From: Macrostomum lignano
Lineage: Eukaryota
Direction: 5' to 3'
DNA: 64,000 nt
NCBI GenBank assembly: GCA_002269645.1
Contig: NIVC01002755.1
Location: forward strand, 62,001 to 126,000
The position numbers and the translations under genes are program-made. This document shows positions 24,501 through 27,500 of this stretch, one piece after another (position 1 is the first letter of the stretch; each line of letters starts with the position of its first letter). The notes below the pieces were generated by a model that was not told the origin of the DNA, did not search any database, and was given only the letters and a program-made list of their open reading frames with translations.

Positions 24501-27500
24501 AGACAGCTAGATCGCCTCGCCCTCCCGGCCTCACCCAGGCGGGCAGTTGCTAGCCAGCTTCAGGCACGAGCTGATGGTTTTCGAAAGCGAGATGGCCAGA
24601 CGCTTGATGGCCATGCTGAAGGCCAAGCAGTCTCAGACGCTTGAGATGCGGGTGAAGACCGTGACAAACAGGTTTGTTCAGGCCAGCCAGGCTTCATCCG
24701 GCCGGCCTCATGGGTGTTGTGGCTTCCTCTCTCTGTCGTACTGAGTTGTCTTTCTCATCTTCCTCTATTTGCACGCACTTTTGTCTTTATTTTTTTCTAC
24801 CTGTAGTCATTAGTGCTTTGTTCAGCCCTTTATAAACTCCAGCTCCTGAACCAACAGGTACTTAATGTATTAAAGGACATAGAGGGACAAAATGAACCTT
24901 TTTGGTTGTCATTTGTATGTTCTGATTGGTTAAAAATTGTACTTTGACAGTGCGAACTGTGCTGTGCATAGCAATGTACACTAGACTGTGCAAAGCAATG
25001 TACACTAGACTGTGCATAGCAATGTACACTAGACTGTGCATAGCAATGTACACTAGACTGTGCATAGCAATGTACACTAGACTGTGCATAGCAATGTACA
25101 CTAGACTGTGCAAAGCAATGTACACTAGACTGTGCATAGCAATGTACACTAGACTGTGCATGCATTGTACACTAGACTGTGCATAGCAATGTACACTAGA
25201 CTATGCATAGCAATGTACACTAGACTGTGCATAGCAATGTACACTAGACTGTGCAAAGCAATGTACACTAGATGATGCATAGCAATGTACACTAGATGAT
25301 GCATAGCAATGTACACCAGACTGTGCTCAGTACACCGGGGTCGCATCAGTGCACAGTGCTAATCAGAAAAGCAACCCGTGCCCGCGCATGGCAACCAGGC
25401 GAGTCCGGGCGCCTCAGCCAGCGCGAGGAGGCAGACCTGCGCAACTTCACCACCCACTGCCTGTCGCTGGTGAACACGCGGCAAGAGCTGGAGACCAAGG
25501 GGCGCATTGAGCAGCGAATTCAGAGCATCTACAGCGGGTGAGGAACGCCTGGAAGGCGCGCCAATCTCCAGTGGCGCCAGCAGCGAACGGCCAGAATTTC
25601 GCCTAATTTAAACTACTTTGAGCAGTAGCGATTAACACCAAACTGGTTTGCACTCACAGCTGCTTAAACCTAACTACGCTCGTAATTGACTGAAGTTTTT
25701 CCTTTGCATCTACTACTTTCTAATAATATTCGTTGTATACTGCTCACAAGTAGAATTTTCTATTTAATATTGTTTGCCTAACAGAATAATTGATTTAACT
25801 TCCGAAAAGAACAACAAAGATGCGCGAACTCTGAACTCCCAGGCTGGACGAGCTGTACAAGATGTGCGACCGCATCGATGAGCGCTTCGACGACGAGCGG
25901 CACCAAGGCTCTGGCGGCGGCAGCGGTGGCGGCGACCGCGAGGGCTCGGCGACGAGCACCAAGCCAAGACTTCCGCCCGCGGCGGCCGCCGCAGCTGCTC
26001 CGGAAGCGTCTCAGCCACCTCTGCAGCTGCCATCGGGCTCCAACAAAAGGTCACCAACCGTGTCGGTGAATGAGGATGTTCAGCTGGAAAAGCCAAAGCC
26101 GTCGGTAAGTCAGACAGACAGCCCGGCCACAGTCTGCCTGCCTGCCTGCCTGCCTGCCTGCCTGCCTGCCTGCCTGCCTGCCTGCCTGCCTGCCTGCCTG
26201 CCTGCCTGCCTGCCTGCCTGCCTGCCTGCCTGCCTGCCTGCCTGCCTGCCTGCCTGCCTGCCTGCCTGCCTGCCTGCCTGCCTGCCTGCCTGCCTGCCTG
26301 CCTGCCTGCCTGCCTGCCTGCCTGCCTGCCTGCCTGCCTGCCTGCCTGCCTGCCTGCCTGCCTGCCTGCCTGCCTGCCTGCCTGCCTGCCTGCCTGCCTG
26401 CCTGCCTGCCTGCCTGCCTGTCTGTCTGCCTGCCTGTCTGTCTGTCTGTCTGTCTGTCTGTCTGTCTGTCTGTCAGTCTGTCTGTCTGTCTGTCTGTCAG
26501 TCTGTCTGTCTGTCTGTCTGTCTGTCTGTCTGTCTGTCTGCCTGTCTGTCTGTCTGTCTGTCTGTCTGTCTGTCTGTCTGTCTGTCTGTCTGTCTGTCTG
26601 TCTGTCTGTCTGTCTGTCTGTCTGTCTGTCTGTCTGTCTGTCTGTCTGTCTGTCTGTCTGTCTGTCTGTCTGTCTGTCTGTCTGTCTGTCTGTCTGTCGG
26701 TCTGTCTGTCTGTCTGTCTGTCTGTCTGTCTGTCTGTCTGTCTGTCTGTCTGTCTGTCTGTCGGTCTGTCTGTCTGTCTGTCTGTCTGTCTGTCTGTCTG
26801 TCTGTCTGTCTGTCTGTCTGTCTGTCTGTCTGTCTGTCTGTCTGTCTGTCTGTCTGTCTGTCTGTCTGTCTGTCTGTCTGTCTGTCTGTCTGTCTGTCTG
26901 TCTGTCTGTCTGTCTGTCTGTCTGTCTGTCTGTCTGTCTGTCTGTCTGTCTGTCTGTCTGTCTGTCTGTCTGTCTGTCTGTCTGTCTGTCTGTCTGTCTG
27001 TCTGTCTGTCTGTCTGTCTGTCTGTCTGTCGGTCTGTCTGTCTGTCTGTCTGTCTGTCTGTCTGTCTGTCTGTCTGTCTGTCTGTCTGTCTGTCTGTCTG
27101 TCTGTCTGTCTGTCTGTCTGTCTGTCTGTCTGTCTGTCTGTCTGTCTGTCTGTCTGTCTGTCTGTCTGTCTGTCTGTCTGTCTGTCTGTCTGTCTGTCTG
27201 TCTGTCTGTCTGTCTGTCTGTCTGTCTGTCTGTCTGTCTGTCTGTCTGTCTGTCTGTCTGTCTGTCTGTCTGTCTGTCTGTCTGTCTGTCTGTCTGTCTG
27301 TCTGTCTGTCTGTCGGTCTGTCTGTCTGTCTGTCTGTCTGTCTGTCTGTCTGTCTGTCTGTCTGTCTGTCTGTCTGTCTGTCTGTCTGTCTGTCTGTCTG
27401 TCTGTCTGTCTGTCTGTCTGTCTGTCTGTCTGTCTGTCTGTCTGTCTGTCTGTCTGTCTGTCTGTCTGTCTGTCTACATGCCCAGCACTAACTCTACTCA

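What the first reader, a model, noticed from the sequence alone, without database searches (positions are those of the whole stretch)
24539..25537. Mutually exclusive exon pair swaps the TRPM C-terminal coiled-coil (assembly) segment
Seen: two GC-rich exons of 133 and 139 nt lie between exon 15 (ends phase 1) and exon 17 (starts phase 2). Both are phase 1 in, phase 2 out. Either alone keeps the frame; including both or skipping both shifts it. Both peptides look like versions of the TRPM post-TRP segment leading into the coiled coil ([12 protein letters not shown]...[11 protein letters not shown] versus [12 protein letters not shown]...[11 protein letters not shown]) yet share little identity, suggesting an old exon duplication. 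Known: the C-terminal coiled coil contributes to TRPM tetramer assembly and trafficking. Inference: the gene makes two isoforms with different assembly specificity or gating, which I do not recognise as a described TRPM splicing mode.
Basis: partly seen in the sequence, partly recalled or inferred. Interest (0 to 1): 0.85.

Follow-up and report, generated by a model that had tools for sequence, protein, structure and literature searches.

The report
Candidate alternative rib-helix exons, flatworm TRPM
A TRPM ion-channel gene of the flatworm Macrostomum lignano carries two very different versions of the exon for its 'rib helix', arranged so that only one fits the reading frame at a time. This probably yields two channel isoforms, but no RNA evidence could be obtained.

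Summary
Exons at 24539-24671 (133 nt, "16a") and 25399-25537 (139 nt, "16b") lie between the TRP-box exon (23878-24059) and the next exon (25843-26104). All have AG/GT sites and both enter in phase 1 and leave in phase 2. Either one alone keeps the frame; both together or neither gives a premature stop.

The window is Macrostomum lignano. Both peptides are real homologues of one TRPM segment: each adds about 30 bits to a TRPM profile (z about 10; 0 of 500 shuffles reach it). Both carry the gene's coding periodicity (GC3 0.84 and 0.89). 16a resembles a nemertean TRPM (z 8.7) and 16b a trematode TRPM (z 8.0), but they do not detectably resemble each other (z 0.7). That argues both are still translated.

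The interpretation needs correcting. The swapped piece is the rib helix plus about 1.5 heptads of the pole helix; most of the coiled coil is constitutive. Altered gating or coupling is therefore more likely than altered assembly.

No transcript evidence could be obtained. An in-frame "both included" variant exists through an alternative acceptor (exon start 25367). Four related loci each hold a single copy. Verdict: a well-supported candidate and a new member of a known kind.

The parts
23878..24059 (+). Constitutive exon ('15') encoding the TRP helix (IWKFNMY) and TRP re-entrant helix; ends in phase 1
   Evidence: It aligns to the TRP domain of solved TRPM2/4/5/7/8 structures. GC by codon position is 0.50/0.28/0.90.
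24060..24538 (+). Intron 15-16a (479 nt). Most of it is two minisatellites: a 14-mer x6 at 24072-24157 and a 37-mer x8.8 at 24182-24505
24539..24671 (+). Alternative exon 16a, 133 nt, phase 1 in / 2 out. Peptide [45 protein letters not shown], net charge +4, 5 Met. It is the version closer to the general TRPM rib-helix consensus
   Evidence: E 1.8e-7; 117.0 bits against shuffles 84.8+-3.2; GC3 0.84; z 8.7 to Tubulanus
24672..25398 (+). Intron between the two alternative exons (727 nt), with a 24-mer x15 minisatellite at 24962-25326. It is too long for steric exclusion, and no docking/selector pairing was found
25367..25398 (+). Optional 5' extension of 16b. An acceptor AG at 25365-66 would give a 171-nt exon that stays in frame after 16a (linker [10 protein letters not shown]). 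This is the 'both included' rival and is what UniRef model P0001 uses
25399..25537 (+). Alternative exon 16b, 139 nt, phase 1 in / 2 out. Peptide [47 protein letters not shown], net charge 0. It is used, with exactly these junctions, in UniRef model P0002
   Evidence: E 0.018; 112.3 bits against shuffles 83.3+-3.1; GC3 0.89; z 8.0 to Dicrocoelium
25508..25510 (+). First in-frame stop (TGA) if 16a and 16b are both included through the canonical sites
25843..26104 (+). Constitutive exon ('17'): the bulk of the pole (coiled-coil) helix, [20 protein letters not shown], followed by a low-complexity linker; ends in phase 0
26067..26069 (+). First in-frame stop (TGA) if both alternative exons are skipped; it lies 35 nt upstream of the exon 17 donor
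27514..27987 (+). Last coding exon, with a distal helical segment ([34 protein letters not shown]) and stop TGA at 27985-87. It follows an intron holding (GTCT)x336

Best explanation
The window holds a TRPM-family cation-channel gene of the flatworm Macrostomum lignano (+ strand, about 12600-27987). Between the TRP-domain exon and the pole-helix exon it carries two diverged copies of the exon that encodes the rib helix and the first ~1.5 heptads of the pole helix. Most likely the two are spliced as mutually exclusive exons, giving two isoforms that differ only in this ~45-residue helix. Exclusivity would be enforced by the reading frame: 133 and 139 nt are each 1 mod 3, so double inclusion or double skipping produces a premature stop. 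It would not be enforced by steric hindrance, by U2/U12 incompatibility, or by any RNA docking/selector pairing I could detect. Shown here: the exon anatomy, the frame arithmetic, the homology of both peptides to one TRPM segment, the coding signature of both, and single-copy status in four related loci. Inferred: that both are used, and used alternatively. Also inferred is the functional consequence. In solved TRPM3 channels the rib helix penetrates the intracellular domain and transmits signals between that domain and the transmembrane domain (PMC12819145). The two versions here differ by four charges per subunit (+4 against 0) while keeping the same heptad register into exon 17. The likely effect is therefore a shifted gating set-point or altered regulator binding, not altered tetramer specificity.
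For: The organism and gene are identified by UniRef names for near-identical gene models and by tblastn mapping. The TRP domain matches solved TRPM structures at E 1e-13. Both exons are homologous to the same segment: with a TRP-to-pole profile from 61 non-Macrostomum TRPMs, isoform A scores 117.0 bits, isoform B 112.3 and the skipped form 80.1. Shuffled inserts score 84.8+-3.2 and 83.3+-3.1, and 0 of 500 reach the real value. The two exons are the two best rib-profile hits in the whole window, and both align without gaps in the family alignment. Both look like live coding sequence. GC by codon position is 0.51/0.35/0.84 for 16a and 0.60/0.42/0.89 for 16b, like exon 15 (0.50/0.28/0.90); intron controls show no such GC3 excess. 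16a is similar to a nemertean TRPM (z 8.7, 0 of 1000 shuffles) and 16b to a trematode TRPM (z 8.0, 0 of 1000), although they are not detectably similar to each other (z 0.7). A dead copy should not keep such cross-phylum similarity. The 3' exon boundary (..R|LDEL..G|LDEL) coincides with that of the nemertean, the two trematode loci and the ENA contig L001. UniRef model P0002 joins 15->16b->17 at exactly these sites and skips 16a. AlphaFold2 predicts the same long helix, with pLDDT about 90, for both isoforms. Hydrophobic core positions of the last 14 residues are in the same register in both. The architecture meets the published MXE criteria of similar length, conserved splice sites and frame, and homology (PMC3228551). 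Frame-shift/NMD is a recognised way of enforcing exclusivity (PMC5740500).
Against: I have no transcript evidence, and no sequence showing the 16a->17 junction. The only clean gene model (P0002) uses 16b. The two models that contain 16a (P0001, P0057) also contain 16b, reached through shifted splice sites; they come from an assembly that differs from the window by indels. In the window sequence, 16a plus a 16b that starts at 25367 is in frame, so the frame argument does not strictly force exclusivity. Direct 16a-16b similarity is not significant; their homology is only transitive, through the family profile. The 16b acceptor has a poor pyrimidine tract. No second rib exon exists in the four related loci examined, so conservation of the pair cannot be shown. 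Whether NMD works this way in flatworms is unknown to me.
Confidence: 0.6

Rival explanations
1. Only one of the two exons is productively used, and the other is an unused or rarely used duplicate. If 16b is the used one, as in model P0002, transcripts containing 16a would be noise or NMD substrates.
For: The only clean UniRef model uses 16b alone. No model or other sequence shows 16a joined directly to exon 17. All four related loci manage with one rib exon.
Against: Both exons keep an open frame, canonical sites in the right phase and a frame-specific GC3 of 0.84 and 0.89. Each shows z about 8 similarity to a TRPM of another phylum or class while sharing nothing detectable with the other exon. 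That is hard to reconcile with neutral decay since an old duplication. 16a is in fact the version closer to the general TRPM consensus and has the better pyrimidine tract.
Confidence: 0.2
2. Both exons are included together in one mRNA through the upstream acceptor (exon start 25367). The protein would then carry two rib-like helices in tandem joined by [10 protein letters not shown].
For: The join 16a (133 nt) + 25367-25537 (171 nt) is in frame with no stop. UniRef model P0001 has this arrangement (...[18 protein letters not shown]...). Trematode TRPMs carry an 85-102-residue insert between the TRP domain and their rib helix.
Against: P0001 differs from the window by frame-changing indels (KGK-R-LLASF instead of [12 protein letters not shown]; SSGGLMG instead of SSGRPHG). 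My inference is that a gene predictor threaded a frame through an error-prone assembly, so P0001 is not a transcript. None of the 61 aligned TRPMs has two rib helices. The trematode inserts show no similarity to 16a (z <= 1.0). The 25367 acceptor (gtgctaatcag|A) has almost no pyrimidine tract.
Confidence: 0.08
3. The two exons do not come from a tandem duplication within this gene. Exon 16b, the trematode-like type, was instead captured from a paralogous TRPM gene. How the two are then spliced is left open.
For: 16a and 16b are no more alike than random sequences (z 0.7), yet each has a much closer relative in a different animal lineage. TRPM genes are expanded in flatworms: S. mansoni has 8 (PMC5196486).
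Against: The phase, the first codon context (G|GC...) and the 3' boundary are identical in the two exons. That is what tandem duplication leaves behind; capture from a paralog would have to reproduce the boundaries exactly. No paralog DNA was available to compare.
Confidence: 0.1

Closest known systems
Mutually exclusive exon pairs whose exclusivity rests on reading-frame incompatibility (survey of human and Drosophila MXEs, PMC5740500; prediction criteria, PMC3228551)
   Same: The exons are adjacent, of similar length, with the same splice phase and canonical GT-AG sites, and they encode the same structural element. Their lengths are not multiples of three, so joint inclusion or joint skipping shifts the frame.
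   Different: The two exons are far more diverged than typical predicted MXEs: 13% identity, not significant pairwise. Exclusivity is not shown by RNA, and an in-frame escape route through an alternative acceptor exists.
MXEs in ion-channel genes, for example CACNA1C exons 8/8a (mentioned in PMC5740500) and, from my own knowledge, insect para and TRPA1
   Same: An alternative version of a short helical module in a tetrameric or pseudo-tetrameric cation channel, expected to tune gating rather than abolish function.
   Different: Those cases sit in transmembrane or linker segments and are validated experimentally. This one is in the cytoplasmic rib helix of a TRPM channel and is only predicted.
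RefSeq TRPM8-like isoforms X1/X2 (XP_069140028/29; P0151/P0010)
   Same: A TRPM-family gene with two equal-length isoforms (1444 aa) that differ only in one ~45-residue block. That is the signature of an MXE pair.
   Different: The variable block is residues ~810-855, just before and into the first transmembrane region, not the rib helix. The two versions are clearly similar to each other.
Rib helix of vertebrate TRPM3 (rabbit residues 1163-1192; PMC12819145) and of TRPC4 (calmodulin clamp; PMC13532682)
   Same: It has the same position in the fold: after the TRP helices and before the pole helix. It is the element that couples the intracellular domain to the pore domain, and in TRPC4 its N-terminal portion, together with the preceding linker, binds calmodulin.
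   Different: In those channels the helix is a single constitutive sequence; no alternative versions are described in the papers I found. The mapping of the flatworm exon onto residues 1163-1192 is extrapolated from an alignment that covers only the preceding 52 residues.

Membership tests
TRPM channel gene | TRP helix with the WKF(Q/N)RY-type box directly after S6, followed by TRP helix 2, the rib helix and the pole helix | tested here: met
   Exon 15 plus either alternative exon plus exon 17 aligns to solved TRPM2 (6co7, E 1e-13) and to TRPM4/5/7/8/1/3 over the TRP-to-pole region. AF2 gives helices at 2-27, 33-51, 53-58 and 60/68-128.
TRPM channel gene | N-terminal melastatin homology (LSDAT/MHR) region and a six-helix ion-transport domain upstream | tested here: met
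   UniRef M. lignano models named TRPM1 and LSDAT_euk domain protein (P0002, P0004) map by tblastn to window 12600-23660, exon by exon. Pfam was not run on the window exons themselves.
Mutually exclusive exon cluster | Neighbouring internal exons of similar length | tested here: met
   133 and 139 nt, separated by a 727-nt intron, with no constitutive exon between them.
Mutually exclusive exon cluster | Conserved splice-site type and identical reading-frame phase | tested here: met
   Both are AG|...|GT, phase 1 in and phase 2 out, and both start with GC completing a Gly codon.
Mutually exclusive exon cluster | The exons are homologous and encode the same part of the protein | tested here: met
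   Direct pairwise similarity is not significant. Each nevertheless matches the same columns of a TRPM profile with z about 10 against shuffles and the same residues of solved TRPM2. Homology is therefore transitive only.
Mutually exclusive exon cluster | Exactly one exon of the cluster is present in each mature transcript | not testable with these tools
   No RNA-seq or transcript collection for this species was reachable. The word-index protein search failed to return even known M. lignano models.
Mutually exclusive exon cluster | A mechanism that prevents joint inclusion or joint skipping | tested here: inconclusive
   Frame incompatibility is present: stops at 25508 and 26067. It can be bypassed through the acceptor giving exon start 25367. 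Steric hindrance is excluded by the 727-nt intron. All sites are GT-AG, so there is no U2/U12 incompatibility. No docking/selector inverted repeats were found beyond one 12-nt match. NMD itself cannot be tested here.

The most novel reading that the evidence does not exclude
The two rib-helix versions are ancient, separately conserved types: 16a resembles nemertean and crustacean TRPMs, 16b resembles a trematode TRPM. Macrostomum alone keeps both in one gene and switches between them by cell type or condition. The switch would toggle the charge of the rib helix (+4 against 0 per subunit) at its interface with the melastatin-homology domains. That is the interface whose dissociation accompanies heat and agonist activation in TRPM3. 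Alternatively, the switch would create or remove a calmodulin-type binding site on the basic, Met-rich 16a helix. This would be a natural 'rib-helix swap' experiment showing that this helix sets TRPM gating.
Probability: 0.15. Interest if true: 0.6.

Novelty: new member of a known kind. Interest (0 to 1): 0.4.

Why it matters
If both isoforms exist, this is a natural swap of one whole structural element, the rib helix, in a TRPM channel. Recent cryo-EM work identifies that helix as the transmitter between the cytoplasmic sensor domains and the pore. Comparing the two isoforms by electrophysiology would test that idea directly with nature's own chimeras. The finding also bears on annotation. 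The public M. lignano gene models for this locus disagree with each other: one uses b only, and others thread both exons through shifted frames. Recognising an MXE pair would resolve them. Flatworm TRPMs are pharmacologically important from my own knowledge (a TRPM is the praziquantel target in schistosomes), but I did not establish any orthology to that channel. In the wider view, mutually exclusive exons in ion-channel genes are a well-known phenomenon, so this adds a case rather than a principle.

Tried and rejected
1. The search for homologous proteins timed out three times. It twice returned 'no candidate', although P0001-P0003, which contain long exact stretches of the queries, are in the collection. 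These negatives are uninformative, so I could not look for transcript-derived proteins carrying the 16a->17 junction.

2. A search for docking/selector RNA pairing in 24040-25880 found only a palindrome and one 12-nt match between the intron and exon 16b. I did not pursue it.

3. A profile built from four trematode rib helices did not pick out 16b in the window (E = 1). Only the pairwise match to Dicrocoelium P0039 is strong.

4. I tested whether the trematode insert upstream of their rib helix is a relic of a 16a-type exon (motif G-x-Q-L/M-F-x-F against GGQLLASF). This is not supported: z <= 1.0.

5. A self-tblastn of every exon against the gene found no other duplicated exon.

6. AlphaFold2 monomer models give one continuous helix through the rib and pole regions. 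They did not locate the rib/pole kink, so I took that boundary from alignments and the literature instead.

7. DNA for the Dicrocoelium gene, the best relative of 16b, could not be fetched because the gene range is too long. The RefSeq isoform pair P0010/P0151 is not on record by exact product.

8. Literature searches for a described TRPM rib-helix or C-terminal MXE found nothing relevant.
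Full report
**What is there.** I read 23800-26200 and translated the four exons in all frames.
- The exon at 23878-24059 encodes [60 protein letters not shown] and ends GAGG|gtgagt with one base left over.
- Exon 16a (24539-24671, 133 nt) and exon 16b (25399-25537, 139 nt) both follow an AG and precede a GT.
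- Both start with GC, which completes a glycine codon, and both leave two bases over.
- The next exon starts at 25843. It ends at 26104 (CCG TCG|gtaagt), slightly earlier than I first assumed.
- Joining 15+16a+17 or 15+16b+17 gives an open frame.
- Joining all four gives TGA at 25508. Skipping both gives TGA at 26067.
- An exhaustive list of AG...GT, phase-compatible open segments between exons 15 and 17 contains these two exons and their extensions. Everything else is a translation of the two intronic minisatellites or of AT-rich intron.

**Organism and gene.** An HMMER search of 1.84 billion representative proteins used a two-row profile of both isoforms. It found five near-identical proteins plus one paralog, and then a large gap down to E about 1e-16. 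These are UniRef entries of Macrostomum lignano named TRPM1, Ion_trans domain protein, LSDAT_euk domain protein and so on. tblastn of these models places the gene on the + strand from about 12600 to the stop at 27985-87. The nearest relatives outside the species are TRPM-like proteins of shrimps, a nemertean, a bivalve and trematodes. Flatworms have an expanded TRPM family (PMC5196486).

**Are both exons real versions of one protein segment?** Directly, they are not recognisably similar. They share 6 identical positions of 45, BLASTP finds nothing, and a global alignment gives z = 0.7. Each nevertheless aligns to the same residues of solved TRPM2 channels, with almost the same score (54.6 and 54.7 bits to 6co7). 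Each also aligns without gaps to the same columns of an alignment of other TRPMs, which show the conserved pattern L..FE......L........E.R(V/I)......D.L. I made three quantitative checks.
1. **Rib-helix profile.** A 47-position profile of just this region was built from 61 TRPMs, none from Macrostomum. Run over all 1,697 six-frame fragments of the window, it ranks the 16a ORF first (E 1.8e-7) and the 16b ORF second (E 0.018). Nothing else falls below E = 3.
2. **Context shuffle test.** With a profile spanning the TRP helix to the pole helix, isoform A scores 117.0 bits, isoform B 112.3 and the skipped form 80.1. Five hundred composition-preserving shuffles of each insert give 84.8+-3.2 and 83.3+-3.1, and none reaches the real score.
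3. **Cross-lineage similarity.** Exon 16a is strongly similar to the homologous exon of the nemertean Tubulanus (z 8.7). Exon 16b is strongly similar to the rib helix of a Dicrocoelium TRPM (z 8.0). Both resemble Nematostella TRPM2 at z 4.5-4.9.

**Are both still coding?** GC content by codon position is 0.51/0.35/0.84 for 16a and 0.60/0.42/0.89 for 16b. That is the same strong third-position bias as constitutive exon 15 (0.50/0.28/0.90). Equal-sized intron pieces show no such third-position excess. Add the intact frames, the intact splice sites and the cross-phylum similarity of two exons that no longer resemble each other. I read this as purifying selection on both, meaning both are translated. 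This is an inference, not an observation of RNA.

**Which part of the channel is it?** In the alignments the alternative exon begins a few residues after the second TRP helix. It ends about 12 residues into the helix that continues in exon 17.
- In rabbit TRPM3 the rib helix is residues 1163-1192. The query's first 52 residues align to 1093-1144, so by extrapolation the rib helix falls on about residues 10-40 of the alternative exon.
- The last 11-12 residues ([12 protein letters not shown] / [12 protein letters not shown]) have hydrophobic residues at the same positions in both versions. They are in heptad register with [15 protein letters not shown] of exon 17.
- The pair therefore swaps the rib helix and the first ~1.5 heptads of the pole helix. 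Most of the coiled coil is constitutive.
- A further helical segment whose sequence looks coiled-coil-like lies at the very C-terminus in the last exon.
- AlphaFold2 predicts the same long helix for both isoforms with pLDDT about 90, but as a monomer it does not show the rib/pole kink.

**How it most likely works.** The architecture meets the published criteria for mutually exclusive exons: similar length, conserved splice sites and frame, and homology (PMC3228551).
- **Steric hindrance** is excluded, because the intron between the two exons is 727 nt.
- **U2/U12 incompatibility** is excluded, because all sites are GT-AG.
- **Competing RNA pairing** was not found.
- **Reading frame** is what remains. 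Lengths of 133 and 139 nt make double inclusion and double skipping out of frame. [quoted passage not shown] It accounts for 71% of the validated MXE genes that have Drosophila orthologues (PMC5740500).

On function, 16a is basic (net +4, five Met) and 16b is neutral. In TRPM3 the rib helix penetrates the intracellular domain and transmits signals between it and the transmembrane domain. Its electrostatic contact with the MHR1/2 domain of the neighbouring subunit breaks on activation by heat or agonist (PMC12819145). In TRPC4, calmodulin clamps the linker before the rib helix and the helix's N-terminal portion (PMC13532682). I therefore expect the isoforms to differ in gating set-point or regulator binding rather than in who assembles with whom. 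That step is inference.

**What speaks against it, and the rivals.** I could not obtain any transcript evidence.
- The public gene models disagree. P0002 joins 15->16b->17 at exactly the predicted sites and skips 16a. P0001 and P0057 contain both exons.
- Comparing P0001 with the window shows it differs by frame-changing indels: KGK-R-LLASF, and SSGGLMG instead of SSGRPHG. It also uses an acceptor that puts the exon start at 25367. I infer that a predictor threaded a frame through an error-prone assembly.
- In the window sequence, however, 16a + 25367-25537 is also in frame. A double-inclusion mRNA is therefore possible in principle, although that acceptor has almost no pyrimidine tract.
- None of the 61 aligned TRPMs has two rib helices.
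- The alternative that one exon is a relic is disfavoured by the coding signature and the cross-phylum similarity of both. It cannot be excluded.

**Relatives.** I fetched four related genomic loci:
- an ENA contig carrying the closest non-Macrostomum match to exon 15 (L001);
- Calicophoron (L002);
- Tubulanus (L003);
- Echinostoma (L004).

Each has a single rib-helix exon between the TRP exon and the pole-helix exon. In each the 3' boundary is at the same position as in Macrostomum, and there is no second copy in the flanking introns. The pair is therefore not a general TRPM or flatworm feature as far as I can see. Because orthology among these genes is not established, this says little about the age of the duplication. 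The very different affinities of 16a and 16b suggest either an old duplication or capture from a paralog.

**Comparison with what is known, and verdict.** Mutually exclusive exons in ion-channel genes are a familiar device. Within the TRPM family, a RefSeq isoform pair (P0010/P0151) differs only in one ~45-residue block before the first transmembrane helix. Such events therefore occur in TRPM genes, though at another site. Literature searches found no description of alternative rib-helix exons. I file this as a well-supported candidate: a new member of a known kind. My confidence is about 0.6 that the two exons are used alternatively. Interest is moderate.

Noticed in passing
window 5448-8739, 14055-14400, 14843-15780, 16421-16941, 18044-18965, 19830-20226, 20547-21882, 22198-23452, 24182-24505, 24962-25326, 26132-27475 and many more: Many introns of the TRPM gene, and much of the rest of the window, hold a different minisatellite array with periods of 12-110 nt, including (GTCT)x336 in the last intron. 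Several arrays are open in some frame and show up as spurious ORFs and as bogus peptide in public gene models (for example CRLAVFRLAVF... in P0001 and P0003).
   Followed up: partly
P0010 / P0151 (RefSeq XP_069140029 / XP_069140028): Two equal-length (1444 aa) isoforms of a TRPM8-like gene are 98% identical and differ only in residues ~810-855, just before and into the first transmembrane helix. This looks like an annotated mutually exclusive exon pair in a TRPM gene at a different site.
   Followed up: partly
UniRef models P0001, P0003, P0032, P0057 against window 19600-27987: The public M. lignano protein models for this gene or its near-identical copies contain frameshifted stretches, translated intron and repeat sequence, and inconsistent handling of exons 16a/16b. 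One is named 't-SNARE coiled-coil homology domain-containing protein'. They look like artefacts of an indel-rich assembly.
   Followed up: partly
P0095 (Calicophoron) residues about 1118-1140; locus L002 47400-47690: Directly after its TRP domain this trematode TRPM has ADLRNVTQEMNSVLIQAV, which matches the [14 protein letters not shown] of exon 16b (z 3.9, 5 of 1000 shuffles). Yet its main rib-helix-like segment lies ~90 residues further on. I have no explanation for this.
   Followed up: partly
window 27514-27984: The last exon ends with a helical segment, [34 protein letters not shown]. By eye, similar C-terminal helices appear in the shrimp and nemertean homologues (for example P0006, P0007, P0008, P0009). 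This may be a second conserved coiled coil of this invertebrate TRPM group.
   Followed up: no
window 1868-3499 (-), 35279-36682 (-), 52549-53382 (-): Neighbouring genes by Pfam are a zf-met/C2H2 zinc-finger protein, a short-chain dehydrogenase (adh_short, E 2.8e-28) and an Exo84/Vps51-like N-terminal domain protein.
   Followed up: partly
L001 10846-11001 (ENA contig ERZ21939214:ctg6615l): An unidentified eukaryote in a metagenome assembly carries the closest non-Macrostomum match to exon 15. Its single rib-helix exon (PQLTPYQKEMQSVFEKEMVMKLLRENQLSPKVSSEKHIAKILSG) mixes features of both versions: FEKEM as in 16a, and a ...SG|gt ending as in 16b.
   Followed up: partly
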